Shown piece by piece: positions 74-41,965 of a stretch of DNA of 64,000 nt. How positions within the stretch are numbered: the stretch's first letter is position 1; each line of letters begins with the position of its first letter. The notes beneath the pieces were generated by a model, which saw only the letters and a program-made list of their open reading frames with translations, did no database searches and was not told the origin of the DNA. The stretch is from Octopus sinensis (Eukaryota), in NCBI RefSeq assembly GCF_006345805.1, contig NC_043000.1, forward strand, positions 102,176,001-102,240,000. Reading direction: 5' to 3'. The position numbers and the translations under genes were made by a program.

Positions 74-126
<53 letters not shown>

Positions 127-656: not shown

Positions 657-721
<65 letters not shown>

Positions 722-4059: not shown

Positions 4060-5800
4060 GAAATCATAGTTTCATAACGTAGCTTTAGAGAATGTTTTAT
4101 ATACGGAAAATATAAAAAAGAGACTCGCAAATATATATTTACTTACCTCATTTACAAATTGATTGAGTTCTTCGATCTTTCAGGGCAAATATATATTTAT
4201 TACATTTCCTTTTAATTATTTGTGCGAGAATCTTTTTTAACTGACATGAGACAAAGCTGAAAGTCTTTTCTTTCCTATTGAAGTTCATTTAATTCTCTTC
4301 AATGCAGAAAAGTACCACTCTACTCAAGCAGAATTGTAGACAGAATTGTTAAAAGCAAATTCCAAAGATCGATGAGTTCTGGTAGAGTATCAAGAAGGTC
4401 ATTGATATAAATCTAAATGATTATATTACATATACTTTTGCTTCTTAAAATTTTCCATTATTTATATAACATGTACTTCATTGCACGCTTCAAGATTCTC
4501 GTAAATACTTTCAAAAAGGCAGACTAGGAAATTACAATTTTCTTTTGTATTATTAATGAAATGAAGCTAGTAATTTCATCTTTTTTAACAATGTTATTTA
4601 ACTCATTGGCTATTTTGGGTGATTGTATAAGAAACGTACCCAATCCATTTGTAGAAAAAATATCTTGCATTCTTTTATAGCAGAGCATGCTTGTGAAATA
4701 ACTAAATTACAGACTATTGTCCTGCCTCTGTTGTGGCACCATCATAGGTCTGTGTAATTAAGAAGGCGGCGAGCTGGCAGAAACGTTAGCACGCCGGGCG
4801 AAATGCGTAGCCGTATTTCGTCTGCCGTTACGTTCTGAGTTCAAATTCCGCCGAGGTCGACTTTACCTTTCATCCTTCCGGGGTCGATAAATTGAGTACC
4901 AGTTACTCACTGGGTCGATATAATCGACTTAAACCGTTTGTCCGTTCTTATTTGTCCTCTCTGTGTTTAGCTCCTTGTGGGTAGTTAAGAAATAGGTTTG
5001 TGTAATTAATTTATTTTCACTCTTCCATGTGTGAACGTATTTAAAAACATGTTCAGATGAGGCATTTTCTGAACGGTTAAAAATAGATAAATCATTCTTT
5101 AGCAACGCATCTTCTGCAAAACAGCGCAAAGAGTTTGCTTAAATTCATTTTCTATTTACTTCAATATTACTTTCTTTAATTGTATCACTCAGGTCATTTT
5201 GAATTCCATTTGAACGACATGAGAAAATAAACTGTGCCTTTTTTTTGCCGATTTTTCATCACACTGATTAAATATAAAAGTTTCTTACTCTCCCGTAATT
5301 ATCAGCTGGTTCAGACTTGATATGACCACGATATGATAATTCATGATGATCTAAAAAAATAGCTGCAACAATAAATCATCGCAGAATAGCACTGTTTCGC
5401 TTAACTTCATTATGCTGTTGTATGCTCAGTCTTTTTATGCGCATCTAAATGTAAGTCTATGCGAACATTTCTTAATGTTTTAAGATCGATCCGGATTTTA
5501 TGTCTTTGAGAATGTTTATATTTTAGCATGATCTGATGTAGATTATTTAAATCATCGTAACCTTTATCATTCCAAATAATTATTTTTCCTAAACTATATA
5601 ACAAGTTTACCAGCAAAATAACTTATTTAGCTAAGCATTTTTTTCCTTTCATATATAATAGTTTGAAACTGTTTAACACATATTTTATTGGAGCCTTGCA
5701 AATTAGATAATTTTGGCATTGGTCTGTCATAATTTATAATTAATTGCTTCTCTTTAAAGTTTTTTTTCTGGAGAAACTAGTTTTCAAAAGTTCTACAACA
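4060..5800 (-). mobile_element. Decayed hAT transposase remnant of ZMYM1/DUF4371 type
   Basis: Minus-strand peptides WNDKGYDDLNNLH, HNEVKRNSAILR..FLDHHELSYRGH, SNGIQNDL and C-terminal FSALKRIK..SIGKKRLSALS. Interrupted by the SINE at 4762. Ends not identified. Confidence 0.65.
4762..4991 (+). mobile_element. tRNA-derived SINE family 1, tail type A (Tx1-like tail)
   Basis: A-box-like TGGCAGAAACGTTAG, B-box-like GAGTTCAAATTCC, tail ...TTGTGGGTAGTTAAGAA. 18-bp TSD ATAGGT(C/T)TGTGTAATTAA at 4744-4761 and 4992-5009. Confidence 0.9.
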
Positions 5801-6949: not shown

Positions 6950-7560
6950 TTTCTCACTCGAATTATTTTCAACGATTGTACATGCAAATAAATCCATGAC
7001 CATGCAATCTACGGTCATACAAAACAAGACTTGCATACTCAGAATGATACCACTGATATACTGTCCTCCTGCCTTTGGTGTGACAACATAAATACGACCA
7101 AGTGTTTCTTATTCGAGAACGTTCAAATGGCCTTCAACTTTTTTCCTTGCTTTCTTCTTTGCCATTCTTTGCTACTACTGTTCCAAATGAAATACATGGG
7201 TACTTCAGCATAAAGCAATGTTGTTGCAAAGTCATCATTGATGCACGATGAGAGGAATTTTCTCATATGTCACTAATTTACAGCCACGTATATCCTGATA
7301 ATTTCTTAGCAATATTCTTTGTTCATCTGGTAGATGAACCTGCAGTTTCACTATTGTAGGTGCTCTTTCATGAACTGAAAATCCTAAAATAGATGCAACT
7401 GCTTCGGATTGTCCATTATACCTACCTATTAGACATTGAAAAATTTCCTATCATATCATTTCCTTTCAGTGTGTACTGGATGACGTATTTAATTGACCTC
7501 ACTGAGGCAACGATTTCAACGTTGCAGTGACATTTGAATGTTCTTAAAAGAATCTCATTA
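6950..7560 (-). mobile_element. Helitron RepHel remnant (region after the Rep catalytic motifs)
   Basis: ORF 7422-7619 VVPYNEILLRTFKCHCNVEIVASVRSIKYV; next frames EAVASILGFSVHERAPTIVKLQVHLPDEQ and LYAEVPMYFIWNSSSKEWQRRKQG, typical Helitron motifs. Confidence 0.85.
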
Positions 7561-8573: not shown

Positions 8574-8605
<32 letters not shown>

Positions 8606-8644
8606 TAATAATAATAATAATGATAATAATAATAATAATAATAA

Positions 8645-8711
<67 letters not shown>

Positions 8712-8712
<1 letters not shown>

Positions 8713-8835
8713 CATACAGTGTCATTAGGAACAGCTAGAATACTTAGGAGTGTTATTGGCATTTAAGGTTACTTGTTAGAGGCTGATTTTAGGAATTTTT
8801 CTTTTCCAGCAGTCTAATATGTAATGCGTATATGA

Positions 8836-8895
<60 letters not shown>
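8712..8895 (+). mobile_element. R4/Dong-like extreme 3' fragment with 3' UTR and (TAA)n tail
   Basis: TVSLGTARILRSVIGI* matches the C-terminus of R4/Dong-type ORFs; about 70 nt of UTR, then (TAA)n. Confidence 0.75.
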
Positions 8896-8896
<1 letters not shown>

Positions 8897-10470
8897 TCAT
8901 CAGTGACCTTAGGTTCTGACACTGAGCGCAAAAAGTCTTTAAATCAGGACCAACCTCCTCAAGGAGGATATTCCCGAAACTGACGCTCAGGATCAACTAC
9001 CAAGCCTATCTCAAAGAAACCTATCTCAAAGAAATAGAAATACAAGACAGAAGTGGACTAAAGAGGAATATAACGAAGTTATGCATGCTTATTATTATTC
9101 AACATTAAACCCAGTAACATCAACCACACGAAGAGAGACCTACAATATCTAGAGATGCAAAAACCCGCATACCAGGCTGTACATGGACAGTATAATAAAT
9201 TTGGAGTGGTGAGCCTTAATATCATAAAAAGTAAAAGACTAACTATCAGTGAAATTGACAAAATAGTCAGATAAGTCAATAGTCAGCTCAGTATAAAACA
9301 CACGCACTTATGCTCACAGGCAAAAAGCTCTGAAATCATTAATTCAAACCAGGAAACTAGGTGCACAAAAAACTAAGAAGGTGGACCATCAGTTGATACT
9401 AAAAACACTATAAATGATCACGTCAACAATGAACTGCTAGATGGAATACTAGTACAATATCTAATACAACTACATCAACCTTTCCACAAAAGAGCCCCAC
9501 TTCCCAAAATTATTAATAGTAATAAAAACAGAAAAGTAATCAAAGACGTTGATCAAGCACTTGGAAAGCTGATACTACAACTCCTTGAGAATAGTAGAGA
9601 AAATGCCCTCGATATGATTGATCAACTCATTTACTCAGCTACTTTTGTTGCAACTCAGAAATGCGGTATTAAAATTAGAGATAGAAAAAAGTGCAACGTA
9701 CACAAACAGCTTGCATGTCTGAAAAGAATAAGCCGGCAACTAATCCAACTAAGAGCAGATTTATATTTTCTACTTGAAGCAAGCAAAGGGTAAACTAATA
9801 AACTAATAAATCCAACAAACTAATAAGAATAATTGCTAAACATAACCTTTACAAGAAAACAAAGGATACACAGATTGAAATCCTCAAGCAAAAACTACAA
9901 TTAGAAACCAGACGACTGGCAAGATACAAAACAACGCACATCATTTCATAGACAAAACATACTATTCAAGGAAACACAAAGAAATTCTACAACACCTCCT
10001 CCCCAGCAACAAATTGAAGATTTTTTGAAAATATTTGGAGTAATCCAGAGGTGTTTAATTAGAATGCACATTGGGCCAGGGACATCGAAGAAGCCAAAGC
10101 TCACCTCAAACATCAAGAATGGCAGAATATAACAACTGAAGAAGTGAAAGCGGCGCTCGCCAAGTCAAAGAAATGGAAATCCCCAGGTATAGAGAAGATT
10201 CCAATTTTTGGCTAAACTCTTTAATGAGCACCCACCACAACTTAGCCGAAGCACTCAATGAAGTCATATCAAACCCTGCGAAAGCTCCAAAGTGGCTTAC
10301 AGAAAGGATTATATATATCTTACCAAAAAACAGAAGAAAGTACTAACCCCACAAAATACCGACCGATACCATGCCTCACCACCATATATAATCTATTAAC
10401 ATCTATAATAGCGAATAGAGCATATTAATTCTTGGACAATAGGAAATTATTCCCAGTGGAACAAACTGTA
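8896..10470 (+). mobile_element. R4/Dong-like retrotransposon 5' half (N-terminus to start of RT), 3'-truncated and decayed
   Basis: RQKWTKEEYNEVMHAYYYS, LKQKLQLETRRLARYK, EWQNITTEEVKAALAKSKKWKSPG, KYRPIPCLTTIYNLLT, FPVEQ. Starts directly after a (TAA)n run. Confidence 0.8.
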
Positions 10471-10744
10471 TGAACAGGACTTCATATGAAAAGTATGTTC
10501 ACATTTCCGAATATTCAGGGAAAAAGGAAACTATAGATATTCACAGAAATTGTAAATATCAAAGTTTTAAGAATTTTTAAAGATGATCCCCCAGATAAAG
10601 TTGTGTGATCGCCCAGATGAAGTTGCAGATATGTAAGTTTCTAACCATATTTTGGGAGAAGAATCCATGCGACTTTGGAACCGAACCAAATAATTTTAAA
10701 TATTACATGTAGCTCCTACTAAATTTACTGAGTGTCCTTTTCTT

Positions 10745-11080
<336 letters not shown>

Positions 11081-11084
11081 TATT

Positions 11085-11330
11085 TTTCCCTCACGGGCTA
11101 CTTTTTACTGGAAGGCAATACTTTGTATTGCATTACTGATATTTTGAAACTTCTTCACCGTTTCTCGTACTGTTAGCGTTCCGTATTTCAGTCGAGTGTG
11201 TTAGTATTTATGTGGTAACATCGTAGTTTCGTCTTGGTATATGTTTGGCTGAAGAAGGTAAAGCAAATATGGGTGAGAGACATATCTTGCAAAACCTGAA
11301 ACCTGCAGGTACCACATTATCCATTTTATA
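11085..11330 (+). mobile_element. Short hammerhead-bearing non-autonomous element (Penelope pLTR-like) between (TA)n tracts
   Basis: Its first ~90 bp closely match 56405-56500; contains the hammerhead at 11236-11322. Confidence 0.6.
11236..11322 (+). ncRNA. Type I hammerhead ribozyme (candidate, intact core)
   Basis: CTGAAGA 11249-11255; stem II AGGT/ACCT extended by GCAA/TTGC and ATATG/CATAT; GAAA 11298-11301; stem III ACC-TGCA-GGT; GUA cleavage after 11311; bulged stem I. Confidence 0.75.
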
Positions 11331-11427
11331 TATATATATATGTAAAACCTTAGGGCTGCAAGACAAGACAAAAGTGGGTAACACAAAGTAGAAATGAAAA
11401 ACTATAGACACGACATGGGGTAGAGCG

Positions 11428-11735
11428 AAGTGCTCAGAAAATCGTGACCAGTCCGGTCGAAGGCAACGTGAAAAAGAAAGACACCGCCTTAGGCCGTCAG
11501 GGATCACGCGATAGTGGGAGGTTGGTAACAGAGAAAGGCAGAGAGAGACAGATAGACAGACAGAGATACAGAGAGAGAGGGGGGAAATTAAGAGACGCGA
11601 TGAGCTCAGAAAGTCGTGACCAGTCCGGTCGAAGCCATTGCGAAAAGAATGATACCGCCTTAGGCCATCCCGGATCACGTGATAGTGGGAGGAGGGTAAC
11701 AGAGGAAGATAGACAGCGAGAGAGAGAGAGGAAAT
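11428..11735. repeat. Two diverged tandem copies (~170-bp period) of a GC-rich unit plus a GA-rich microsatellite
   Basis: GCTCAGAAA.TCGTGACCAGTCCGGTCGAAG...CCGCCTTAGGCC..GGATCACG.GATAGTGGGAGG occurs near 11432 and near 11604. Confidence 0.85.
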
Positions 11736-11874
11736 AAGCCAAGCAATATAAAGGAAAGAGACAGAGTAGCACAAAAATATTCCAAGAATATATATGATTA
11801 GAATTATTTTTTAAGTTATTAACTATTTAACAGGAATTTCTTTACTTTGACAAAATGTCGCCATTGTGGAGGAA

Positions 11875-12165
11875 GTTCGTATATAATATGTATGTTATGT
11901 CGAGAGTGTATTTTTTTTTTCTGTACGCGCTTTCGTTTTCCAAATATTCAAACACATGTTCCGGGCTAATGCATAAAGAGGAAGTTGATTTTTTTTTACA
12001 CCACTACAAAAAATGAAATAATTAAATAGACAAATAAATACATAAATAAATAACAAATTACTTCTTTATGCATTAGCCCGGAACACGTGTGATTGAAATG
12101 TTGAAAAACGAAAGAGCTTACATACAAAACACACACAAGACATAATATACACATTATATACGAAC
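11875..12165. mobile_element. Foldback/MITE-like element, ~110-bp imperfect inverted arms
   Basis: TGTTCCGGGCTAATGCATAAAGA (11957-11979) is inverted at ~12063-12085; the similarity extends outward to GTTCGTATATAAT / ATTATATACGAAC. Confidence 0.8.
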
Positions 12166-12182
12166 AAAAGCTTTTATATATA

Positions 12183-12218
<36 letters not shown>

Positions 12219-12422
12219 TGTATGTATGTATGTATGTATGTATGTATGTATGCATGTATGTATATATATATATATACATATATTTATACATATATAATAT
12301 ATATACGTATATATATATGCATATATATATATATATATATACGTATGCATGCATATATATATATATATATACCTATATATATACGTATACATATACATAT
12401 GTATATATATATATACATATGC

Positions 12423-12459
<37 letters not shown>

Positions 12460-12501
12460 ACATATGTATATACATATATATATATTATACATATATATAT
12501 A

Positions 12502-12545
<44 letters not shown>

Positions 12546-12614
12546 ATTTACATATATATATATATTAGATATATATAAATACATATATATATACACATAT
12601 ATATATATATGTGT

Positions 12615-12671
<57 letters not shown>

Positions 12672-12872
12672 TAATATATGTATGTATAGTAAACAAACAA
12701 GAAATGAATAGCTCAAATCTCTGTGAGTACCGCTAGACTAACAGGGCTAGGTGAATGACAAAGAACACTTTGTTTCGGAGTCAATTAGAAGATGGACATA
12801 GGGTAGCTAAATCTACGCGGGCATTCTTCCAAGTTAACATGCCCAGATCTCTTTGATCCCCATTGCATTCAA

Positions 12873-12903
<31 letters not shown>

Positions 12904-13552
12904 ATGAGTAAGAATATGTCAAAATGGCATATAATAGTTACAGGTAATTAATGCTAAGACGGACTAAATACCTAAAATCCAACGTCGAAGGAATCGGGGC
13001 GAGGTTCACGCAAATAAGAGTTGACTATACGAGATAATATACCACTGGCGCAAATGAAAGTACAATAAAATAGATGGACATATGCTTGTTAATGGCCTCA
13101 AAGCATCTATGAAGTAATTTCATAGAAGTGAATATAAAAATAGAGTAAAAGCAGGAAAAGAAAAATCTAGAAAACAAAAGTTCATAGTAATTCTTAGTAG
13201 ATATGAATATAACCTAAAACTTCATACTGTAATATCACACAGATAAAATAGAGGAGGATCTGCGTAGCTCTTCGTTGTGTTTCATTCCGTATAGGGACGT
13301 AAATCTCCAGAGAGTTCAAATTCGTAACTGACAAATAAGAAGATGGAAAATACAGGTAGTTCTTGACAGGTGATTCTATGATTTGCCGTGCCGTAATGTG
13401 CCTTGTGTTTAAATGAGGCACATTGCTGTGAGCGAAAATATAAGAAATAACACAAGTTTAAATTATATGAACTCTCACCCTACACTACCTTAATCCTCTA
13501 CTCTCTTATTTGTGAAGTTCGAGTTTGAACTCTCCGATTATTTCCACATACA

Positions 13553-13640
<88 letters not shown>

Positions 13641-13641
<1 letters not shown>

Positions 13642-14024
13642 TAGCAGTATCGCCCGGCGTTGCTCAGGTTTGTAAGGGAAAATAACTATAAAGCATTTTT
13701 AGAGAGTTATAGCCAAAAAATAGCAAAAAAATGGGAAAAAAATGATGGTAAATTTTTTTTAGAGTTAAAAAAGGTGGAGTTGCGTCCCCTAGACGGTCTG
13801 TGGTTTGGGTTTCTGATTCTCGACCCCATGTCGAATTTATCGATTTTTTTCAGAACTGGGGGAACTTTTCAAAATTTTCGCTGCGTTAGTTTTGAATTAT
13901 GACATTGGGCTATGTGTGTGTCAAGTTTCATCAGAATCGGTTGAAAGCCGTGGTCAGAGTGAGGGTACGAGAAAACAGACACACAGAAAACGCACAGACA
14001 AACTGCCGTTTATATAGAGAGAGA
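13641..14024 (-). mobile_element. Non-autonomous Helitron (Lep1/DINE-like)
   Basis: On the minus strand: 5' TC, 3' GC-rich hairpin plus CTAG, inserted between A and T; internal AAGTTTCATCAGAATCGGTTGA and ACAGAC motifs. Confidence 0.8.
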
Positions 14025-15019
14025 TATATATAGGTTGAGCTACTACGGAGGGCTTCTTGAAATCTCCTCTATTTTATCCGTGTGAAATTAGAGTATGAAC
14101 CTTCAGGTTTTATATCTATCTATGAAGAGTTACTTGGAATTTTCGCTTTCCTAATTAATCAGTTTAATTAATATGTTTTTACTTATTTCTGTGTAACAAT
14201 ATTATAAATGATTTTAATACCTTTGACAACCGCATTACACACACGCATGTGTATATATGTGTTTATGTGTGTGTATGTATATATACATATATATATATAT
14301 TATATATATATATATATTATATATATAATATATATATATATATATAGATATATATATATATTATATATATATATATTTCTGTGTGAGTTAGAGGTTGAGA
14401 AACTAGCTAAGGGATAGTACCTATCCAATATACTGTTGGTAGTGTACCCATTTATTCATTTTCAGGTGCTAGTTATTGCATGACAATCTCGCAATTAAGC
14501 ATCATATATGGGCTCGGGTAAAAAAAGGATTTACCCACGATTTATACGGCAAATAAGAAAAAGGAGAGGATATATATGTTTGCTCATTTGCTCATTTGTT
14601 TCTCTATACTTATATGTATTCACATCCTTGTCTATGCAGTTACCAGCTTTTTCCACTCGCTAATCAGTATAACGCATACATGTGAGTGTATTCATCCTTT
14701 ACAATTAAATAAATAGACATACATGAATGTTTACTGGCTGATGTCTGTCGATTTTATATCCCCTCCGTTTTCTTATTTGTCATATATATATATAATAGTA
14801 GGGAATATAATTCCAAACTTACAGGGAAACATTCAATTTAGCAATTCTAAATCAAATTTCACAATATATAATATATGTATAGAATTAAGAGAAATAACCT
14901 CTATTAAGTAATTCAATAGTGAAAGATATTATCCATACAATATAGAAAAAATTTAAATATACTATAATACATATTATCACTAAATTAAATAGACATTAAA
15001 TTGACTACGCGCGTTTCGT

Positions 15020-15076
<57 letters not shown>

Positions 15077-15079
<3 letters not shown>

Positions 15080-15636
15080 CTACTAGTAGTTTCGTGCTGT
15101 TGAGGTACCATAATTGGCAGATTTATATAACATTCCATGTGTCTCCAAGCAATCTTTAATGTTCAGTAGATACTGTTTGACTATTTTAAAGTCAGGATGC
15201 TGATCTATGAGAAAACATGAGGAAAAACGAAAAGATAATGCGAAGTATGTTGATGCAAAAAGTGAAACAAGAAGAAAAAGAAAATTAAGGAAACCAAGAT
15301 CTTCGTACCCTTTGTCTGTCGAAATCATAATTAATCTAGCTCCGTTATATTATTCTACATCAGCAAGATTAATTATGATTTCTACAGACGAAGAAAACAA
15401 AGATCTTACTTTTCTTCATTTTCTTTTCTTTCCTCTCAATCCACTTTTTACACGAACCTTCTTCGCGTTTTCTTCTCGTTTTTTTTTCTCTTGTTTTCTC
15501 ATAGACCAGCATCCTAGGTTTCAAACAGATCGAACGGTATCCGCTGAACCTGAAATCTTGCTTGGCGACCTGTGACATGTTATATAAATCTGCCAAATTA
15601 TTGTATCTCTACAGCATGAAACTATTAGAAGCGCTT
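15077..15636. mobile_element. Large foldback (palindromic) element, ~270-bp arms
   Basis: Arms align throughout (e.g. TTGGCAGATTTATATAACA / TGTTATATAAATCTGCCAA; GAAATCATAATTAATCT / AGATTAATTATGATTTC) around a ~20-nt spacer; TA repeats on both sides. Confidence 0.88.
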
Positions 15637-15700
15637 CTAAATTATATATATGTATGTGTATGACTGAGTGCGTGCGTGTGTGTATGTATGTGTGTATGTA

Positions 15701-15763
<63 letters not shown>

Positions 15764-16238
15764 TTTTATCTTTACTTGTTTCAGCCATACTGGAGCACCG
15801 TTCTGACCATGTGTGTATGTGTCTGTGTTTACGTATACTGGTGTAAAATGATGCAGTGAATTTTATTTTAACATTTAATCAACAGAGATCGTTAACATGT
15901 TTCGTTCGGTGCAGTACTTGACATTTTAATTCATTAAGTAATTTAAAGCTTTACAAATATAATTTTTATTACTAGACCAAGTGAACTAATCCTAATAAGA
16001 GGGACGTAATTTATCCCGCGTGACAACAAATGGCTATTCATTCCATTGATGTTGGAAATGAAATAGAGTCGTTAATGGCTAAATCTGAATGAATAATCTT
16101 TTTAAAAAGATGTTCAACCCGAATGGTGTGCTATTCAGCTGTTGAAATTTTTACTAGTAGCTTTAGCCAAACTGTAAACAACTGCATTAAATTATATAAT
16201 TAATCTGTATTAATCTTTCCTACTCCACACAAATTACA

Positions 16239-16304
<66 letters not shown>

Positions 16305-16305
16305 A

Positions 16306-16353
<48 letters not shown>

Positions 16354-16365
16354 TATATTATATAT

Positions 16366-16485
<120 letters not shown>

Positions 16486-16533
16486 GTGTGTGTGTGTGCG
16501 TCTGTGTGTGTGTGTGTGTGTGTGTGTATGTCA

Positions 16534-16710
16534 GATCGCTCTTGAGTGCTACTGGTAACATGTAATCCAGTACAACCTGTCGCATGGTCGGGTCGTCGGC
16601 GACTAAACTGGCAACCTCACCAGGCTTGCTTGGTGAGGAGAGTTATGTTCGACACTCTACGTGATGAAAAAATAAGACCTGTCAAAGGGCGGATGAACTT
16701 CTGAACAGTC
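16534..16710 (+). mobile_element. Probable 5' end of a non-LTR retroelement with a decayed HDV-like ribozyme
   Basis: GC-rich structured block starting right after (TG)n; P1/P2/P1.1/P4/CTAA pattern (see findings); cut off by the Tx1 insertion. Confidence 0.4.
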
Positions 16711-19360
16711 AATTTCTTTATTAACCATGAGGTTGACAAAAAGAGGGGACGATACAAGGACAGACAAAACAAACATTGGGGTCAGGGGATCGAATGAGAC
16801 GAAACGTATGAATAAGCAAACAATTAAAATATATATACAATTAAATGAGAATGATTGATTTACAAAAAATGAAGCAGAAGACGCGGTTGACCCCCACAAA
16901 CCACATACTCACACTGAAAACTTTTCTTTGTCCTGTTTTGGTTCTCATTTAGACAGGTTCTTTCCCTCGCAACATACTTGCTACAGACTTCCATCTTTTA
17001 CCAAACACACTTTGCGACAGGCAATTCTTTTCCAGCCTTACTTTCCGTTTCATGTGGAAAACGAAAAAGTCGATTAGCTCGAGACTGGATATGAACATGC
17101 CTGTTGCAGTTCCTTTCACTCTCGTCTTCCATACTACCTCTTTCGCAACAGCAACTACCGACAGAAAACAGGCTCGCTCCTCCCTATTCAGGGAGAGGCG
17201 GCGGAACGATCTTAAATACGGATTCGCTCGACAGTTGTACTCTTCTCAAATGCGACAGGAGGTGTTTGACATAAGCCCAGTGTTCAGTCACCTTGGAGAT
17301 TTTGCACAATCGCGTACAGGGCACTTTCACTGTCCTGCTCGCATTTTGCACAAACCGGCGAAGGCGCACCCCCATGTCCAAAGAGCTTATCTAGAACCGG
17401 TAAAACTCCTCTGTAACATTGCCAGGCCAGGGACCTTTGGTAATTATCCATAGGCCCCGGCCCGAATATTCTTTGGAATAGGTTGACCAGTTGATCTTCG
17501 TCGAAGCCTAGGGTTTCTCCCAGGACGTCGTTACACTTGAACTCTACTAACCCTCTATAGAAGAACATAGAAGTACCCTCGCCACCGGCGTTGTCCGACT
17601 GGGAAATTAGCATGAGTGCCTGATGGCACTCTGCATGTCACATGCCTAACCTCGGTCAACATTTGATCCATGGGGCCAGTTCAGTAAACGATGTGAACTG
17701 TGGAAATAACAGCTAGACGAAAGGAGACCACACCTGCTCACCGTCCAGGTAAAGCCAGAGGTACCTAAGCCTCAGCGCAGTTTTAGCCACGGCATCCCTA
17801 GACCACCCTTCAGCGGCTTTTGGCAGCTGAGCGCCTTACAAGAGGTGTGCTGCCCCTCCACAAAAAGCGAAAGAACATGCGTTCCAGCTTGTTCAGCCAC
17901 GAATCGGAGCAAGGCACGACGGTCAGGCGGTAAGTGATTACAGGAGTGATAAACACCTCTACAACCTCCTCCACCCTGGTCATGCTAGGAATGGCGCAAG
18001 TATGCGCCTCGCCAACAAGTCCACCCACGACCCGCGCCAACCTTTTTGCTAAAATCATGGCCAAAATCTTCAACTCTGCGTTAAGCAGAGTGATGGGCCG
18101 AAAATTATGAATTAAATCACCCATTTTTGGACCTTTCTTAACGGCTCCACGACCCCTCGGCTCACAGACTTGGGGATTCTCCCATTCTGCTGCTAGTTGG
18201 TGTACACGCATGCAAGTAGGTGCCCAAATAAGTCTAGCATGCTACTATAGAGTTTGTAATGGAGACCATCGAGTCCCGGCGATTTGTCTCCGCCGCAGTC
18301 TTCCAACACATTCTCGACCTCCTTGGCGCTTCACACGATTTCGCATTCCGCCCTGAGAGACGCTGAGAACCGGCCAGGAAGTCTGCGAGCTTCTCCCCAC
18401 GCTCGAGTCCGCCGCTCCTCCTGAATAGCTGGGCGAAATGATCGTGAAACACCTTGCACATCTCCTCGGGTTAATTTATTGATCGACCATGTGCGTCCGT
18501 CAAAGATCGAATGGTTGAGTTGTTGCCACGCTGGCTCTCTACCACCTGGGCCTATCCGGTCCCGCTGATCCAATCCTGTCTCTTTGTACGTATCTTATCC
18601 CTGACAATGCACCCTTCGTGTTTAGCTTTGAGATGTTGGTCCAGTGCCAACCTCGCCGCTAATACTTTCGATGCCCGCCTGACCTCATTGCCTTGTCTAC
18701 TGCCTTAACTAGTTTCTTTTCCACTTTGTTTCTAGCACTAGCTAATTCTTTTCTAAACCTAATCGACTCAAATTTGATGACTCTTTTGAGGGCGTACCAC
18801 TATTTGTCGTTGATAATGTATCCGGTTAACGCCTTCATCAGTAACTGTCTAATCCGCTTCCTGTAGGCTTCACAGTCTACACATGCTATCTAGGTCGAGC
18901 GTACAGGTCACTAATTTGTGATCGCTGTACCTGACGATATGGTGTTGTGGACAGCTATTTTCTTATCTTTCCTACTAGTAATGATTCTATCTATGTAAGA
19001 TATAGACGACCCATCGTTTCTTCACCAGGTCCACGCTGGAACGTCTGGGTGGTCCAGTCTGAATCGATCTGCCAACTCGAAACGACTTAGCATTTCGTTG
19101 AGGCAAGGAAGTGCTCTCCTATTCTTTCTCGAGCCAACATAATCTACGCGTGCATCGCAGAATGTGAAAAAATTCACCTAGCAATACTAACGTGTGCGAC
19201 GTGCCGAGAAAATTCTCTAGGCTTTTGAAGTAATCGTACTGTCCGCCTCTTCCTTAGCGTGGAGCATAGACAGCGACCACCCTAAACACTTTACCACTGC
19301 TGTGCGTCACATGCAAAACGACCAACCTGCCTTCCGGATCTATAAAGACAGTTCTAAAGA
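16711..19360 (-). mobile_element. Tx1/L1-clade LINE, 5'-truncated with an internal deletion of the RT core
   Basis: APE motifs GRLVVLHV..FRVVAVYAP, SYIDRII, YSDHKLV; RT start FRPITLLNAELKILA fused near 17983 to post-RT VFITPVITYRL; LPVLDKLFGHG..CAKC knuckle; 3' end AATAAAGAAATT. Confidence 0.88.
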
Positions 19361-23051: not shown

Positions 23052-23268
23052 TTCTTTTCTACTCTAGGTACAAGGCTCGAAATTTTGGGGGAGAGGGCCA
23101 GTTGGTTATATCGATCCCAGTACGCAAATGGTACTTAATTTATAGACCCCGAAAGGATGAGAGGCAAAGTCGACCTCGGTGGAATTTGAATTCAGAACGT
23201 AAAGACAGAAGAAATACCACTAAGCATTTTCGCTCGGCATGCTAATGTTTCTGCCAGCTCGCTACCTT
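23052..23268 (-). mobile_element. SINE family 1, tail type B
   Basis: Family-1 head/body with tail CCCCAAAATTTCGAGCCTTGTACCTAGAGTAGAAA. Confidence 0.85.
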
Positions 23269-24140: not shown

Positions 24141-24188
24141 TATATTACTCGGGAAGAAGCTTTTATCGTTCTTATTATTATCATTATT

Positions 24189-24654
24189 AAGGCGACAAGC
24201 TGACAGAATCGTTAGCGCGCTGGCCGAAATGCTTAGCAGCATTTCGCCCGTCGCTACGTTCTAAGATCAAATTCCACCGACGTCGACTTTTGCCTTTCAT
24301 TTTTCGGGGTCGATAAATTAAGGACCAGTTGAGTACTGGAGTCGATGTAATCGACTACTCCCTCCCCCAAATTCCAGGCCTTGCACTTATAGTAGAAATG
24401 ATTATTACCATTATTACAGCGGTGAACTGGCAGAAACGTTAGCACGCCGGGCGAAATGCTTAGCGGTATTTCGTCTGCCGTTACGTTCTGAGTTCAAATT
24501 CCGCCGAGGTCGAATTTGCCTTTTATCCTTTCGCGGTTGATAAAGTAAGTACTAGTTGAGTACTGGGATCGATGAAATCGACTAGTCCCACCCCCATGCC
24601 ATAATTTCAGAACTTGTGCCTATAGTATGAAGGATTACTATTATTACTACTAAT
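24189..24654 (+). mobile_element. Two tandem family-1 SINEs, both tail type B with (ATT)n ends
   Basis: Copy 1 24189-24416, copy 2 24418-24654; copy 1 follows an ATT-rich run, copy 2 starts in the ATT tail of copy 1. Confidence 0.88.
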
Positions 24655-26880: not shown

Positions 26881-27286
26881 AAAACTATTTTGTTCTTCTC
26901 TTTGTATTTTCTGATTTGAAGGATGCCCTCGTTCGGCTGTGGTTTTGCGTTCTCTGATTTACACAGAAGCACAGCAGAATGTGGGCATCGGCATCCTTCG
27001 TAGCTCGAAATAGAAATGTCATAAAACCAACGCAAAACAGTTCCATTCACGTTTTGTGTATGTGTGTGCGTTAGCGTGCATGCATGTCTGTTTGTCTGTC
27101 TGTCTATTTATATGTATGTACGTATGTATACCTTAAAGATATGAAAATTACAGTATTCATATTGGCAGAGAATCGGTTGAACGTTAGAACAGCCCATTTC
27201 TTTTTCTTCAAATCCGTGCTCCAATAGATATTCTCTAGATCTGGTTTTAATGGATTGTTCTCTACAAACAACAAATTTAGCTTATA

Positions 27287-27453
27287 AATTATTTCTACAG
27301 GAAGCACAAGGCCTCAAAATTTGGGGAAAGTGATTAAGTCGATAACATCGACCCCAGTAAGTAACTGGTACTAATTTTATCGACCCCGAAAGAATGAAAC
27401 GGAAAGTCGTCCTCGGCAGAATTTGAACTCAGAACGTAAAGACATGAAATACC
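27287..27453 (-). mobile_element. 3' half of host family-1 SINE (tail B), split at its GGTATTTC site
   Basis: Begins (minus) GGTATTTCATGTCTTTACGTTCTGAGTTCAAATTC and runs to tail B. Confidence 0.85.
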
Positions 27454-29178
27454 AATTTCTTTATAGTCCACAGGGAGCCAAACACAGAAATGGACAAAAC
27501 AACAGATTGGGATCAGGAATACGTTATGATTTTACATAAAATATAAATATAAAAATTATATAAAATATTAAAAAAATCGAATGAAATTATCAATACAAAG
27601 ACAACACAAATGTAGCGATGATCAGGCCACGCTCCGACCCCATAAGCCCGATCTATCGCTGGTACCTTGTTTTTGTTCTTCTTTTATAGCCTATTCACAC
27701 GGTTCCTTGCACGCACAACACTCGTGCAACATGCTTCCATCTCTTTTTGAATATACTCTCCGATAGACACCTCTTCTCCAGACACACCTTCCTTTTCAAA
27801 GGAAAAGTAAAACATGATCGTAAATAAAGTTGCCTGTCTTAATCCCTTTTATTCTAGTCTTCCATACTGCCTCTTTCACTATTGCTACAACCGTGAGAAA
27901 ACAATTCTTACCTTCGTTTGTAAAACTTCCGGTGGGTCGATTTTTATAATTGACTCAATCGACAGATGTACTCTTCCTTCGCCGGACAACAAGTGTTCAG
28001 CATAAACCCACATTTCAGATATCTCCAGACACTGGGCAATAGCGTGAGGGACGGTTTTTCTGTGTCCCTCTCATCTTGGACAGGTCGGAGACTGACGCTT
28101 TCCATGTCTTGCGAGCTTATCGCAAACGGGCCATTTTTCTCTTGTTGTTAGTTGCTATCTCTTCTCCTCCTCCTCACCATCGGATTCTTCCTCGCCGTCT
28201 CTACAGTGCTTTTTTTTTATATGGCCCAGCTGGCCACACTGGAAACATCGGGGCTTACGTCCCTCGATGAATACGTTAAGGAATTCCTCCCCAATTTCTA
28301 TTTTCTCCTGGAACTGTTCTAAAATTGATTGTTCGGCTTCTTTTAGGTGAACCGTTTGACCGGTCCAATAAGCCTTTTCTGTGACGGTAACCTGAAGGAG
28401 TGTTATATTATCTTCCTTTTTTGCCCGGACTGTCGCCATCAACCACATAGGGTCGACTTGAGGTAGGACCCTTGGTATGCGTATCTTTGACGTCCTCATT
28501 CCCATATATATTGGAATTAAAACAACGTCCTCCGTTTCTAAAGATGTAACTGAGTGCATTTGTGCAGTTTCTATATCTTTTAGTCGTACCTCGATAGTAA
28601 TATCCTGCCAGATGGGTTTCAAGCACTTCTCAACTTTCTCTTCGCTCACTCGATCATTTTTTTCCTTTTAGACAGTAAGATTTTAAAATAATTGTTTTTC
28701 TTTTTTCTAACAGTAATAGTTCTTCCGATGTGTTGAACTTTCACAACACGTCTTCAATTGTTATCATATCTTTGTATTTTATCAGATCATTTTTGTTTGT
28801 CGACAGCTGGCGGGTTCCACCTCCAGCCGCCGACGCAAAACTTCAATATTCCTCTTTGCAACAGCACACATTGATGGTTGAGGAAATTCACTTTCAGAAG
28901 AATACGAAATATCACCAAATATTAAATTTTTAATCTTTTTTACCTCTCTGCCGGTTGACGACTCTTCACCAGACGAAGTTACACTTTTCGGCAGCTTGCC
29001 AGCAATTAATGTTTCCCCCACAATGGAAAACACACGATAGTTTTCGAGCGAAGACTATCACACAAATAATTATAACAGGAACAATAATCATAAGAGGAAA
29101 TAACACAAAAACATTCAATAGAGACTTGCACTTACTATACAGACGCACTTCAATAATTACCAATAAATCCAAACTCAC
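27454..29178 (-). mobile_element. ORF1-only (HAL1-like) Tx1 derivative: 5' UTR + ORF1 + ORF2 C-terminus + 3' UTR
   Basis: ORF1 with zinc knuckle; join near 28131-28154 straight to PVCDKLARHG..CPR..HAIAQC (ORF2 C-terminus); end TATAAAGAAATT; TSD-like ACAGACGAAATACC (29179-29192) versus A--CATGAAATACC context (27440-27453). Confidence 0.82.
28155..28649 (-). pseudogene. Tx1/L1-type ORF1 (gag-like) fragment with CCHC knuckle
   Basis: 164-aa ORF ending VFIEGRKPRCFQCGQLGHIKKKHC plus an acidic patch. It probably extends upstream through a frameshift in an A-run (~28660) and stops toward 29033 (inference). Confidence 0.8.
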
Positions 29179-29192
29179 ACAGACGAAATACC

Positions 29193-29382
29193 TATTTCTT
29201 TACTACCCACAAGGGACTAAACACAAAGGAGACAACAAAAGATTATATCGACCCCGGTGCGTAACTGGTACTTAATTTATCGACCCTGAAAGGATGAAAG
29301 GCAAAGTCGACCTCGGCGGAATTTGAACTCAGAACGTAATAGCAGACGAAATACCGCTAAGCATTTCGCCGGCTCGTTGCCT
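29193..29382 (-). mobile_element. Family-1 SINE, tail type A, ending at the GGTATTTCGTCTG target
   Basis: Minus strand: head (small deletion), body, ...CCCTTGTGGGTAGTAAAGAAATA|GGTATTTCGTCTGT. Confidence 0.85.
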
Positions 29383-29412
29383 TGGATAGAGTATTAAATA
29401 TTTAAAAAACAA

Positions 29413-29634
29413 TGACCCTTTCTACTGAAGACAGAATGCCATGAAATTTTTTTGTTGGGCGGGACTAGTCAATTACGCTGACTCCAGTGTTTCACTGGTA
29501 CTTAATTTATCGACCCTAAAGGGATGAAAGGCAAAGTCGACTGCGGTGGAATTTGAACTCAGAACGTAGCGGCAGACGAAATACCGCTAAGCATTTCGTC
29601 GAGCGTACTAACGATTCTGCCAGTTCGCTGCCTT
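29413..29634 (-). mobile_element. Family-1 SINE, tail type B, with ~30-bp duplicated flank
   Basis: Complete head/body; flank TTG(G/A)ATAGAGTATTAA(A/G)TATT(T/C)AAAAAA at ~29381 and ~29633. Confidence 0.85.
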
Positions 29635-29682
29635 GAATAGAGTATTAAGTATTCAAAAAAATAATAATAACAGAGATATTTA

Positions 29683-29770
29683 CAAGGGTTGCCTGAAAAG
29701 TTCACAGGCTGACAAAGATAATTTCATGGAATGTGACCAAATGAGGGTTATTTTTCAACGTAGCCCCCCT
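29683..29770 (+). mobile_element. Mariner-type left end fragment
   Basis: TA|CAAGGGTTGCCTGAAAAGTTC resembles the TIR of the 30651 MITE; no right end seen. Confidence 0.45.
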
Positions 29771-41689: not shown

Positions 41690-41935
41690 AATAAAAAACG
41701 GATAAAAAAAACAAGAAAAAAAGTAACATGATACATGAAAAGTATTAATAAGACGCTCAGGAAAGGAAAGTAAGGGTTTTTTACGTTTCGAGCAAAGCTC
41801 TTCTTCAGAAACAGGAGACAGAGCAAAGTCCAAAAGGAAAGCAAGACGGATGAAAAAAAACGCCAACAATCCACATGTAGTTACATATTATGTATATCTA
41901 TCTAGTCCCGTCTGTGTTCAGCCCTGTGTGGCTAA
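41690..41935 (-). mobile_element. Short hammerhead-bearing pLTR-like element
   Basis: Minus strand CTGAAGA-A-GAGC-TTT-GCTC-GAAA-CGTA (41782-41808); shares TTCCTGAGCGT..TAATAC with 51325 and 55340. Confidence 0.6.
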
Positions 41936-41965
41936 TAAAGAAACATATCTATCTATCTATCTATC

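What the first reader, a model, noticed from the sequence alone, without database searches (positions are those of the whole stretch)
27287..29382. Tx1 / HAL1-like / SINE stack: two Tx1-tailed insertions at the same site inside a SINE head
Seen (minus strand): SINE head and body, then tail A ending AAAGAAATA, GGTATTTCGTCTGT, a 1725-bp Tx1 derivative ending AAAGAAATT, GGTATTTC(A)TGTCTTTACG, and the rest of a SINE with tail B. GGTATTTCGTCTG lies between the A and B boxes of this SINE family (also intact near 24466 and 29580). Both 3' junctions fall at the same |GGT position, and the motif is duplicated around the Tx1 derivative as a TSD. Known: several Tx1-clade families are target-specific (e.g. 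Keno in U2 snRNA genes, Tx1L in a DNA transposon). Inference: a Tx1 lineage prefers the Pol III head of the host's most abundant SINE, while a subfamily of that SINE borrows the Tx1 3' tail. The SINE would therefore be both passenger and landing pad. Caveat: the tail-A SINE at 4762 landed at a non-SINE site that shares only GGT (GGTCTGTG), and the Tx1 at 16711 landed at GACTG, so specificity is not absolute.
Basis: partly seen in the sequence, partly recalled or inferred. Interest (0 to 1): 0.8.

Follow-up and report, generated by a model that had tools for sequence, protein, structure and literature searches.

The report
LINE and SINE reuse one SINE site
In an octopus-type genome, a dead L1/Tx1-like retrotransposon and a SINE carrying its 3' tail both inserted at the same nucleotide inside another SINE copy, and the same site is hit twice more in an unrelated Octopus vulgaris locus, so this element family has a sequence-preferring insertion site, a known kind of behaviour with a new target.

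Summary
On the minus strand, 29382-27291 is a nested stack. It reads: one SINE head, T1 (GGTATTTCGTCTG), a SINE body ending in a Tx1-type tail (AAAGAAATA), T2 (GGTATTTCGTCTGT), a 1725-bp ORF1-only L1/Tx1-like derivative ending AAAGAAATT, T3 (GGTATTTCATGT), then the rest of a SINE with a different tail. There is only one head. The best reading is therefore one host SINE hit twice at the same nick site, each time with a 14-bp target-site duplication.

A non-orthologous O. vulgaris locus repeats this. It has the same derivative family and a tail-A SINE, each inserted at |GGTATTTCGTCTGT of two other SINE copies. In 106 kb of Octopus DNA, all 7 tail-A/derivative junctions are followed by GGT (two read from the 5' duplicate copy or the SINE consensus, one of them tentative). 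Five are followed by GTATTT and 4 lie at the SINE-head site. None of 8 tail-B SINE junctions is.

This matches the known pattern of target-preferring Tx1 LINEs with dependent SINEs (Tx1-Mar/SINEU). The sample is small. Preference for the SINE head beyond a short GGTATTT core is only suggestive (p about 0.03-0.1). No autonomous partner was found, and Tx1-clade placement was not tested phylogenetically.

The parts
29356..29382 (-). 5' head of the host SINE (AGGCAACGAGCCGGC..GAAATGCTTAGC). It carries an internal deletion of about 21 bp that removes most of the A-box region. It is the only head in the whole stack.
   Evidence: Alignment with six other SINE copies; sequence extraction.
29343..29355 (-). 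T1: first copy of the target motif, GGTATTTCGTCTG. It is either the 5' duplicate of the tail-A SINE insertion or the homology junction between host head and SINE-A cDNA.
29193..29342 (-). Tail-A SINE insertion: SINE body from the B-box region onward, plus a Tx1-type tail of about 50 nt ending AAAGAAATA.
   Evidence: BLAST and alignment with the full-length tail-A copy at 4765-4994. Tail identity to the Tx1-derivative tail is 39/45.
29179..29192 (-). T2: second copy of the target motif, GGTATTTCGTCTGT. It is the 3' duplicate for SINE-A and the 5' duplicate for the Tx1 derivative.
   Evidence: D2.
27454..29178 (-). Non-autonomous L1/Tx1-like derivative, 1725 bp. It contains a 5' UTR, a degraded ORF1, an internal deletion of the endonuclease and RT, a remnant of the ORF2 C-terminus, and a 3' UTR ending AAAGAAATT.
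   Evidence: Same family as L001 9226-11435 (67-84% identity, different deletion). The ORF2 C-terminal remnant matches the Tx1-like element at 16956-17170 at 66%.
28155..28649 (-). Longest open piece of ORF1 (164 aa). It has one CCHC-type zinc knuckle, CFQCGQLGHIKKKHC. The N-terminal part of ORF1 is out of frame at 28782-29033.
   Evidence: Pfam zf-CCHC E=0.003, below the gathering score. The only database relative is an O. vulgaris hypothetical protein at 62% identity.
27442..27453 (-). T3: third copy of the target motif, decayed to GGTATTTCATGT (one G>A change at a CpG and a 2-bp loss).
27291..27441 (-). Remainder of the host SINE: B-box region, body, and tail B ending ...CCTGTAGAAAT.
4765..4994 (+). 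Full-length tail-A SINE at a non-SINE site. Its duplication is ATAGGTYTGTGTAATTAA and its 3' junction is ...TAAGAAATA|GGTTTGTG. It shows that the tail ends before GGT and that GGT belongs to the target.
16711..19360 (-). 5'-truncated, internally deleted copy of a second Tx1-like family. It keeps the C-terminal half of the endonuclease, the start of the RT, and the C-terminal zinc-finger region. It ends ...GGTTAATAAAGAAATT|GACTGTTCAG.
   Evidence: Six-frame translation. 38% identical to P0002, E=7e-66. tblastn with full-length relatives.
29412..29632 (-). Intact neighbouring SINE whose head site (GGTATTTCGTCTG at 29585) is unoccupied. It shares a 29-bp 5' flank with the host SINE.

Best explanation
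The region is a fossil stack made by target-primed reverse transcription at one re-used site.

**Order of events (inferred from the anatomy).** A tRNA-type SINE with tail B first inserted here. An L1/Tx1-like LINE family then nicked the bottom strand of this SINE's head between ...GCTTAGC and GGTATTTCGTCTGT, and nicked the top strand 14 bp downstream. This family is seen here only as an ORF1-only deletion derivative. Reverse transcription of a template ending ...AAAGAAAT(A/T) from that nick gives element|GGTATTTCGTCTGT, with a 14-bp duplication on both sides.

**Why the site is re-used (inferred).** Each insertion recreates the 14-bp site on both flanks, so it can be cut again. One event inserted the 1725-bp derivative. 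The other inserted a SINE subfamily (tail A) that carries the last 45-50 nt or so of the derivative's 3' end and is therefore mobilised in trans by the same enzyme.

**Why there is one head (inferred).** The SINE-A cDNA is homologous to the host SINE, so its 5' end was resolved by annealing inside the shared motif.

**Nature of the preference.** It is sequence-based, with the core ^GGT, usually ^GGTATTT. The SINE head is the commonest carrier of the full 14-mer. The SINE family is therefore both a passenger of this LINE and its most frequent landing site.

**What is shown and what is inferred.** Shown: the anatomy, the duplications, the shared tail, and recurrence at the same nucleotide in an unrelated locus. 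Inferred: that the endonuclease sets the specificity, the order of events, and the homology-mediated 5' joining.
For: **Anatomy.** Three motif copies bracket the two inserts.

**Chance.** The 17-nt junction occurs twice in the window and 0 times in 100 shuffles.

**Independent replication in O. vulgaris L001, which does not align with the window outside repeats.**
- A host SINE head (9162-9220) plus GGTATTTCGT(acgt)CTGT is followed by the derivative ending AAAGAAATT, then |GGTATTTCGTCTG and the SINE rest. The whole is flanked by the host's own 17-bp duplication AATATATTTTGCARTCT.
- Separately, a tail-A SINE ends AAAGAAATA|tGTATTTCGTCTGTCTTTACG, followed by the rest of another tail-B SINE.

**A third kind of site.** A 5'-truncated tail-A SINE lies antisense in a SINE body, with duplication (G)GTATTTATTTCATCTAT.

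**Tally and control.**
- 7/7 tail-A/derivative junctions begin with GGT, 5/7 with GTATTT, and 4/7 are at the SINE head. None of 8 tail-B junctions begins with GTATTT, p=0.007.
- Occupancy is 3/6 for head GGTATTT sites against 1/19 for other GGTATTT sites, p=0.03.

**Shared tail.** Tail A matches the derivative tail at 39/45 and 40/47, against 35/47 for the other Tx1 family.

**The composites are not copies of one master.**
- The host SINE halves are 76% identical, and they differ in the tail-proximal segment (CGACTTAATCAC against GACTGGCCCCC).
- The 5' ends differ.
- The internal deletions differ by about 430 bp.

**Enzyme type.**
- The second family in the window keeps endonuclease and RT remnants.
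- A full-length relative has Exo_endo_phos, RVT_1 and zf-RVT domains.
- Its best match among solved structures is human LINE-1 ORF2p at 2e-73, against 3e-25 for R2.

**Precedent.** Tx1-clade families with sequence-specific targets, SINEs that share the target, and tandem insertions sandwiching a duplication are described in PMC4494074.
Against: - **Small sample.** There are ten Tx1-type 3' ends in 106 kb of Octopus DNA, and two of them are the finding itself.
- **Specificity is relative.** Three of seven tail-A/derivative insertions are outside SINE heads. Three ends of other Tx1 families lie at GACTGT, (ATT)n and (TA)n.
- **Weak excess over a short core.** The excess of SINE-head use over a GGTATTT core is weak statistically: p=0.03, or 0.10 without the finding.
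- **One call is tentative.** The GGT at the L003 junction is read only from the 5' duplicate copy, because the 3' copy lies in a (TA)n tract.
- **No enzyme in hand.** No intact autonomous element carrying this exact tail was found, so the endonuclease could not be examined.
- **One case lacks independent duplication evidence.** In L001 case 4, T1 is ordinary SINE sequence, so the duplication cannot be shown separately.
- **No tail structure.** No conserved RNA structure was found in the shared tail; only a 3-bp hairpin was predicted.
Confidence: 0.75

Rival explanations
1. Homing is guided by RNA-DNA homology rather than by the endonuclease. Source copies already sit in SINE heads. Their transcripts read through into GGUAUUUCGUCUG..., and this 3' extension anneals to the same sequence in other SINE copies. 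It positions reverse transcription there, as described for R2 and R1 templates that carry downstream target sequence.
For: - All junctions are exact to the nucleotide, with no untemplated bases.
- The single-head structure shows that homology between cDNA and target is used at least at the 5' end.
- Co-transcription with the target is discussed as reinforcing specificity in PMC4494074.
Against: - Copies at non-SINE sites end at exactly the same tail position, with no trace of transduced SINE sequence (4994...AAGAAATA|GGTTTGTG; L003 2652).
- The antisense SINE-body site shares only GGTATTT with the head site. The shared feature is therefore a short motif at the nick, which is what an endonuclease preference predicts.
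- The two mechanisms are not mutually exclusive.
Confidence: 0.1
2. The recurrences are not independent insertions. A composite such as head-T-derivative-T-rest, or a dimer SINE-A-T-rest, arose once. It was then spread as a unit by retrotransposition through tail B, by segmental duplication, or by recombination between SINE copies.
For: - The composite in L001 is flanked by a 17-bp duplication that could equally belong to a composite moved as a unit.
- One BLAST alignment runs colinearly from the derivative's 3' part through the junction into the SINE rest (L001 10745-11593 against window 28130-27292, 82.6%).
- SINE pairs in tandem are common here.
Against: - The window composite has a SINE-A between head and derivative. 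L001 does not.
- The host SINE halves are only 76% identical, while the derivative's 3' part is 84% identical. They also carry different subfamily-type sequence near the tail.
- The 5' ends of the two derivatives and their internal deletions differ.
- The outer flanks are unrelated.
- A Pol III transcript of about 2 kb through many T-runs is unlikely (established knowledge).
- Even if SINE-A-T-rest were a dimer family, the window would still need a derivative insertion exactly at tail A|T.
Confidence: 0.06
3. The downstream pieces are the insertions. 5'-truncated tail-B SINE cDNAs stop at one position, for example at a modified base or a structure in the tRNA-like head, so they all begin at GGTATTTC. 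They were inserted just behind A-rich Tx1 tails.
For: - Tail-B SINEs prefer A/T-rich sites, and AAAGAAAT(A/T) is A-rich.
- A weak repeat exists between the derivative's end and the sequence 5 nt after tail B (TATAAAGAAATT against TATAAGCTAAATT).
Against: - It cannot explain T2, the 14-bp SINE-derived motif upstream of the derivative, with SINE sequence upstream of it.
- It cannot explain the L001 composite, where head and rest of one SINE share a clean 17-bp duplication around the whole structure.
- No isolated SINE fragment starting at GGTATTTC was seen at any other kind of site in 106 kb.
Confidence: 0.03

Closest known systems
Tx1-Mar LINEs and SINEU SINEs of crocodilians (Kojima 2015, PMC4494074)
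   Same: - An L1/Tx1-type LINE group prefers a defined position inside another interspersed repeat.
- A SINE mobilised by it inherits the same target preference.
- Tandem insertions sandwich a target-site duplication of about 16 bp.
- Specificity is graded: 13-90% of copies are at the target.
   Different: - There the target is a DNA transposon (Mariner-N4_AMi) unrelated to the SINE, and the SINE heads are snRNA-derived.
- Here the target lies inside the tRNA-type head of the same SINE family that supplies the passenger. A SINE-in-SINE insertion is therefore resolved by homology and keeps a single head.
Other target-specific Tx1-clade families: Tx1L in Tx1D (Xenopus), Keno in U2 snRNA genes, Kibi/Koshi in (TC)n/(TTC)n, and crocodilian Tx1 families in LTR retrotransposons or Harbinger (as summarised in PMC4494074)
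   Same: They use an APE-type endonuclease LINE with a defined, non-poly(A) 3' end, and they insert at a specific sequence of a multicopy target. Microsatellite targeting may also occur here: an (ATT)n flank follows a second Tx1 family and several tail-B SINEs.
   Different: No SINE is listed as a target in the texts I could read. Clade membership of the octopus elements was not tested phylogenetically.
R2/R1 elements in 28S rDNA
   Same: They insert repeatedly at one sequence in a highly repeated, largely neutral target. Downstream target sequence may play a role in positioning (established knowledge; also discussed in PMC4494074).
   Different: R2 uses a restriction-like endonuclease, and R1 belongs to a different APE clade. 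Their specificity is near-absolute. Here it is partial, and the target is itself a mobile element.
HAL1 (half-a-LINE), the ORF1-only L1 derivative of mammals
   Same: It retains the 5' UTR, ORF1 and 3' end, and lacks the endonuclease and RT.
   Different: HAL1 is a propagating family with a defined structure. The two octopus copies have different deletion breakpoints and both ORF1s are broken. A propagating ORF1-only family is therefore not demonstrated.
Alu and L1 insertion into A-rich tails of earlier Alus (L1 endonuclease TT|AAAA preference)
   Same: A short endonuclease motif that happens to be carried by an abundant SINE makes that SINE a frequent landing site for later SINE or LINE copies (established knowledge).
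   Different: The motif here is G-containing, is longer in most cases (GGTATTT up to 14 bp), and lies between the Pol III A and B boxes rather than in the tail. An insertion therefore splits the host SINE's promoter.

Membership tests
L1 superfamily / Tx1 clade of non-LTR retrotransposons | ORF2 with an N-terminal APE-type endonuclease, an RT, and a C-terminal zinc-binding domain | tested here: met
   - Remnants of the endonuclease C-terminal half, the RT start and the Cys/His C-terminus lie at window 16711-19360.
- That element is 38% identical to P0002, which has Exo_endo_phos plus RVT_1.
- The full-length relative P0007 has Exo_endo_phos, RVT_1 and zf-RVT.
- The best PDB match is human LINE-1 ORF2p at 2e-73, against 3e-25 for R2.
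- The 1725-bp derivative itself keeps only the ORF2 C-terminus.
L1 superfamily / Tx1 clade of non-LTR retrotransposons | RT phylogeny places the element inside the Tx1 clade rather than L1 proper | not testable with these tools
   - No named Tx1 reference sequence could be obtained. Cluster names of 30 relatives gave only 'hypothetical' or unnamed proteins.
- Indirect support: L1-Tx1 is the only L1-like group listed among O. vulgaris LINEs in PMC13282606.
L1 superfamily / Tx1 clade of non-LTR retrotransposons | ORF1 with CCHC zinc knuckle(s) | tested here: inconclusive
   - One knuckle-like motif, CFQCGQLGHIKKKHC, is present.
- Pfam zf-CCHC gives E=0.003 and 18 bits, below the 20.8-bit cut-off.
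- The spacing is one residue longer than canonical in the window copy. It is canonical in L001, where His is replaced by Arg.
L1 superfamily / Tx1 clade of non-LTR retrotransposons | Defined 3' end without a poly(A) tail; sequence-preferring integration | tested here: met
   All copies end ...AAAGAAAT(A/T/C), or with (TATC)n, directly at the flank. See the flank tally above.
tRNA-derived SINE with a LINE-derived tail | Internal Pol III A and B boxes in a tRNA-related head | tested here: inconclusive
   - A-box-like TGGCAGAAACG and B-box-like GAGTTCAAATTCC are conserved in all copies, about 50 nt apart, with the motif between them.
- ARAGORN finds no tRNA, and Rfam gives no tRNA match at E<=1.
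tRNA-derived SINE with a LINE-derived tail | 3' tail shared with a partner LINE | tested here: met
   Tail A matches the derivative tail at 39/45, 40/47 and 37/48. It matches the other Tx1 family in the window less well (35/47).
tRNA-derived SINE with a LINE-derived tail | Dispersed copies with target-site duplications | tested here: met
   - The duplications are 14-18 bp.
- Examples: window 4765-4994 and 23056-23268, the L001 host SINE, and L001 5404-5545.
- About 20 copies occur in 106 kb.
Target-specific LINE/SINE pair (Tx1-Mar/SINEU type) | More than 20% of flanks fall in one repeat family (criterion used in PMC4494074) | tested here: met
   4 of 7 tail-A/derivative junctions are in the SINE head, or 2 of 5 without the finding itself. 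The sample is far too small for a family-level statement.
Target-specific LINE/SINE pair (Tx1-Mar/SINEU type) | LINE and dependent SINE use the same position of the target | tested here: met
   Both derivative copies and two tail-A SINE copies sit at GCTTAGC|GGTATTTCGTCTGT.
Target-specific LINE/SINE pair (Tx1-Mar/SINEU type) | Insertions shown to be independent (different hosts, truncations, flanks) | tested here: met
   - The outer flanks are unrelated.
- The host SINE halves are 76% identical and differ in their tail-proximal sequence.
- The 5' ends and internal deletions differ.
- Only four events are available.
HAL1-like ORF1-only non-autonomous LINE family | A propagating family with one shared internal deletion and an intact ORF1 | tested here: not met
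   The window copy lacks about 430 bp that are present in L001. Both ORF1s are interrupted by frameshifts or stops. The architecture is ORF1-only, but a propagating family is not shown.

The most novel reading that the evidence does not exclude
A Tx1-family endonuclease has evolved extended recognition, about 14 bp, of the Pol III head of the genome's dominant SINE.

Its dependent SINE subfamily exploits this reflexively. Because cDNA and target are homologous, every insertion into a sibling SINE is completed by annealing. The insert thereby acquires the landing pad's head, so even 5'-truncated cDNAs regain a promoter.

Source copies of the subfamily escape self-disruption by carrying a mutated site. 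They have CG, GC or GA instead of GG at the nick (0/3 against 8/11 copies with GG, p=0.055).
Probability: 0.2. Interest if true: 0.7.

Novelty: new member of a known kind. Interest (0 to 1): 0.5.

Why it matters
- **Genome structure.** If a genome-wide census confirms it, part of the SINE-in-SINE and LINE-in-SINE nesting in octopus genomes would be explained. SINEs make up about 12% of O. vulgaris DNA (PMC13282606).
- **A new target type.** It would add a SINE head to the list of targets chosen by Tx1-type endonucleases.
- **Competition between elements.** Each hit separates the A and B boxes of the host SINE. The LINE and its passenger would therefore inactivate sibling SINE copies while landing in neutral DNA.
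- **A testable enzyme.** The system offers a short, defined target for biochemical study: GCTTAGC|GGTATTTCGTCTGT with a 14-bp staggered second nick. This could show how APE-type endonucleases gain sequence specificity.
- **If it fails.** It remains an ordinary nested-repeat fossil.

Tried and rejected
**Getting more octopus DNA**
- Exact-pattern scans for the SINE core (TACGTTCTGAGTTCAAATTCC) found nothing in viral, metagenome or prokaryotic collections.
- A six-frame translation of the SINE consensus, used as a protein query, returned only two O. bimaculoides UniRef proteins. Neither is on record in the contig index.
- The ORF1 query found one relative. A stop-free pseudo-ORF2 query found one JGI fragment.
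- Ids from the representative search can be looked up. They gave one Argonauta locus, one O. bimaculoides locus, one unknown ENA contig and two short Logan contigs.

**Clade naming**
- Names of 30 relatives' clusters gave no Tx1 or L1 label.

**tRNA origin of the head**
- ARAGORN and Rfam gave no call.

**Tail structure**
- A search for a conserved RNA hairpin in the shared tail found only a 3-bp stem with no real covariation.

**Readings considered and rejected**
- GGTATTTCGTCTG as part of the element's 3' consensus. It is duplicated on the 5' side, and it is absent after other copies of the same tail.
- A chance coincidence of junctions.
- An assembly artefact. The same arrangement occurs in an independent assembly of another species.
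- 5'-truncated tail-B SINEs inserted behind Tx1 tails. This cannot explain T2 or the L001 host duplication.

**Side check**
- The RT ORF at 52917-53408 is only 23-30% identical to the Tx1-like relatives. It was set aside as another LINE clade.
Full report
**1. What is there**

Read on the minus strand, window 29382-27291 has the following parts.
- A SINE head, AGGCAACGAGCCGGC..GAAATGCTTAGC (29382-29356). It has a deletion of about 21 bp relative to other copies.
- T1, GGTATTTCGTCTG (29355-29343).
- SINE body from the B-box region, plus a tail of about 50 nt ending AAAGAAATA (29342-29193).
- T2, GGTATTTCGTCTGT (29192-29179).
- A 1725-bp element ending AAAGAAATT (29178-27454).
- T3, GGTATTTCATGT (27453-27442).
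- The rest of a SINE, from CTTTACGTTCTGAG to a second tail type ending CCTGTAGAAAT (27441-27291).

The 17-nt junction AAAGAAATWGGTATTTC occurs twice in the window and never in 100 dinucleotide-preserving shuffles. The repeat finder reports the same pair (D2).

The window carries seven copies of this SINE. A consensus built from twelve SINE copies or fragments in the window and L001 shows A-box-like TGGCAGAAACG and B-box-like GAGTTCAAATTCC, with GGTATTTCGTCTG between them. ARAGORN and Rfam do not call a tRNA.

**2. The 1725-bp element**

It holds a 5' UTR, a broken ORF1, and then the last part of an ORF2 and a 3' UTR. The longest open piece of ORF1 is 164 aa with one CCHC-like knuckle. Pfam zf-CCHC scores E=0.003, below the cut-off. 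The endonuclease and RT are missing.

The ORF2 C-terminal remnant is 66% identical in DNA to the corresponding part of a second, 5'-truncated element at 16711-19360. That element keeps endonuclease and RT remnants.
- It is 38% identical (E=7e-66) to an endonuclease-RT fragment, P0002.
- Full-length relatives of P0002 have Exo_endo_phos, RVT_1 and zf-RVT domains.
- They match human LINE-1 ORF2p far better than R2 (2e-73 against 3e-25).

The elements are therefore L1-superfamily. 'Tx1' is plausible, for three reasons: there is no poly(A), the 3' end is defined, and L1-Tx1 is the only L1-like group listed for O. vulgaris in PMC13282606. I could not test the clade, because no named reference was retrievable.

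**3. One head, three motif copies**

If a complete tail-A SINE had inserted into a SINE head, two heads would be present. There is one. The simplest account is:
- one host SINE (head 29382-29356 plus rest 27441-27291);
- two insertions at the same nick, each with the 14-bp duplication GGTATTTCGTCTGT;
- a SINE-A cDNA, homologous to the host, joined at its 5' end by annealing within the motif.

T3 differs from T2 by one CpG transition and a 2-bp loss. The order of the two events cannot be read from the sequence.

**4. Replication elsewhere**

The ORF1 has a single database relative, an O. vulgaris hypothetical protein. Its locus, L001 (OX597817.1), shares only repeats with the window, so it is not orthologous. 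L001 shows three relevant structures.
- **A second derivative at the same site.** It reads SINE head (9162-9220), GGTATTTCGT(acgt)CTGT, the same derivative family ending AAAGAAATT, then |GGTATTTCGTCTG and the SINE rest. The whole is bracketed by the host SINE's own 17-bp duplication AATATATTTTGCARTCT. This is an unambiguous nested insertion at the same nucleotide, again with a 14-bp duplication.
- **A second tail-A SINE at the same site.** About 5.5 kb away, a tail-A SINE ends AAAGAAATA|tGTATTTCGTCTGTCTTTACG, followed by the rest of another tail-B SINE. Again there is a single head.
- **A related site in a SINE body.** A 5'-truncated tail-A SINE lies antisense in the body of another SINE. It is flanked by (G)GTATTTATTTCATCTAT on both sides.

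The two derivative copies differ in three ways: their 5' ends, a difference of about 430 bp in the internal deletion, and host SINE sequence. The host halves are 76% identical, against 84% for the derivative's 3' part, and their tail-proximal segments differ. They are therefore not copies of one composite.

**5. Tally**

Adding an O. bimaculoides locus (L003) gives 106 kb of Octopus DNA with ten Tx1-type 3' ends.

| Type | Location | 3' flank or site |
|---|---|---|
| Tail-A / derivative | window (two) and L001 (two) | SINE-head site, four junctions in all |
| Tail-A / derivative | L001 | GGTATTTATTTC, antisense in a SINE body |
| Tail-A / derivative | window 4994 | GGTYTGTGTAATTA, a unique site |
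| Tail-A / derivative | L003 | Probable GGTATATATGATAAA, read from the 5' copy only because the 3' copy lies in (TA)n |
| Other Tx1 families | window 16711 | GACTGTTCAG |
| Other Tx1 families | L003 | (C)ATTATTATT |
| Other Tx1 families | window 41900-41965 | A (TATC)5 tail followed by (TA)n |

- The eight tail-B SINE junctions are followed by A/T-rich or (ATT)n sequence. None is followed by GTATTT, against 5/7 for the tail-A/derivative type (p=0.007).
- Of GGTATTT sites, 3 of 6 in SINE heads are occupied, against 1 of 19 elsewhere. This gives p=0.03, or p=0.10 if the finding itself is left out.
- Tail A and the derivative tail agree at 85-87% over 45-47 nt. That is better than with the other Tx1 family.

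**6. Interpretation**

The data fit target-primed reverse transcription by an L1/Tx1-like enzyme. Its endonuclease prefers a nick just 5' of GGT, usually GGTATTT, with a second nick about 14 bp downstream. The SINE head carries the full GGTATTTCGTCTGT and is very abundant, so it is the commonest landing site. Duplication regenerates the site, which explains the stacking.

The tail-A SINE subfamily is a passenger of the same enzyme, so this SINE family is both passenger and target.

It remains open whether the enzyme reads more than the short core, and whether read-through RNA helps positioning. The rivals are a composite spread as a unit, truncated tail-B SINEs landing behind Tx1 tails, and chance. 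All are disfavoured by T2, by the L001 host duplication, and by the differences between the composites.

**7. Comparison with what is known**

Target-preferring Tx1 families are described for crocodilians and other animals in PMC4494074. Their targets are DNA transposons, LTR elements, snRNA and 5S genes, and microsatellites. Dependent SINEs that share the target, and tandem insertions that sandwich a duplication, are described there too.

I found no report of a SINE head as a Tx1 target, nor of this behaviour in octopus.

I therefore class this as a new member of a known kind. It has a possible variant, reflexive SINE-in-SINE insertion with head capture, which is inferred only.

**8. Limits**
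- The sample is small.
- Two of the ten junctions are the finding itself.
- No autonomous partner or endonuclease was recovered.
- All copies seen are old and dead.
- The source species of the window is not identified. SINE copies are 75-90% identical to those of O. vulgaris and O. bimaculoides.

Noticed in passing
window 24174-24640; window 29375-29700; L003 1750-2260: Tail-B SINEs occur as head-to-tail pairs that sandwich a repeated flank.
- ATTATTAYCATTATTA occurs three times around 24198-24403 and 24422-24630.
- A 29-bp flank, TTTTTTRAATAYTTAATACTCTATYCAAG, lies before both the SINE at 29632 and the host SINE.
- L003 has a pair in (ATT)n.
Together with a Tx1 end at L003 11874 that abuts (ATT)n, this hints at a second, microsatellite-preferring Tx1/SINE pair.
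   Followed up: partly
L002 (Argonauta hians BAAFZT010000021.1) 9856-12965 and 15359-19074: Two Tx1-like elements are only 67-70% identical to each other. Both end ...GTGGCTAATAAAGAAA followed by (TATC)n of different lengths. Each is then followed by a 179-bp flank that is 98.9% identical between the two and starts GTATTTACTTATTTATCGAAT. This suggests target-specific insertion into a repeated sequence in a distant octopod. The flank again begins GTATTT.
   Followed up: partly
window 41900-41965 (+): A heavily 5'-truncated Tx1 3' end (...GTGGCTAATAAAGAAACA) carries a (TATC)5 tail and runs into a (TA)n tract. It has the same tail type as the Argonauta elements.
   Followed up: partly
window 29185-29201 and 27446-27462 (-): Each insertion junction forms an inverted repeat. 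The tail GAAATA, then GG, then the target TATTTC gives GAAATAGGTATTTC. As a result, the nicked bottom strand ends ...GAAATACC, which resembles the RNA's own 3' end rather than complementing it. This may be chance, or it may reflect what the protein recognises.
   Followed up: no
window 4812-4824; L003 about 2828 (-); L001 about 16933: The full-length tail-A SINE copies carry CG, GC or GA instead of GG at their own head site (CGTATTTCG, GCTATTTCG, GATATTTCG). Of the other SINE copies, 8 of 11 keep GG (Fisher p=0.055). Source copies of the passenger subfamily may therefore be poor targets of their own enzyme.
   Followed up: partly
L004 (ENA ERZ26052130 ctg11195c) 1-16180: Tx1-like elements, each with two ORF1-like genes plus endonuclease and RT, lie in a head-to-tail array. 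The period is 7547 bp and the units are 94.7% identical. The contig is of unknown eukaryotic origin.
   Followed up: no
protein P0014 (WP_347046857.1): A 133-aa 'hypothetical protein, partial [Escherichia coli]' on a 404-bp contig is 58% identical to the Tx1 RT region of the O. bimaculoides locus L003. It is most likely eukaryotic contamination in a bacterial assembly.
   Followed up: no
window 52917-53408 (-): A 163-aa ORF has a clear RVT_1 domain (E=5.5e-23). It is only 23-30% identical to the Tx1-like relatives, so it belongs to another LINE clade in the window.
   Followed up: partly
window 27262-27278 (-) compared with 27497-27510 (-): The sequence just after the host SINE's tail B (AAATTTGTTGTTTGTAG) resembles the start of the Tx1-type tail (ATCTGTTGTTTTGTCC; the repeat finder D10). 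It may be a remnant of yet another Tx1-type 3' end, or it may be chance.
   Followed up: no
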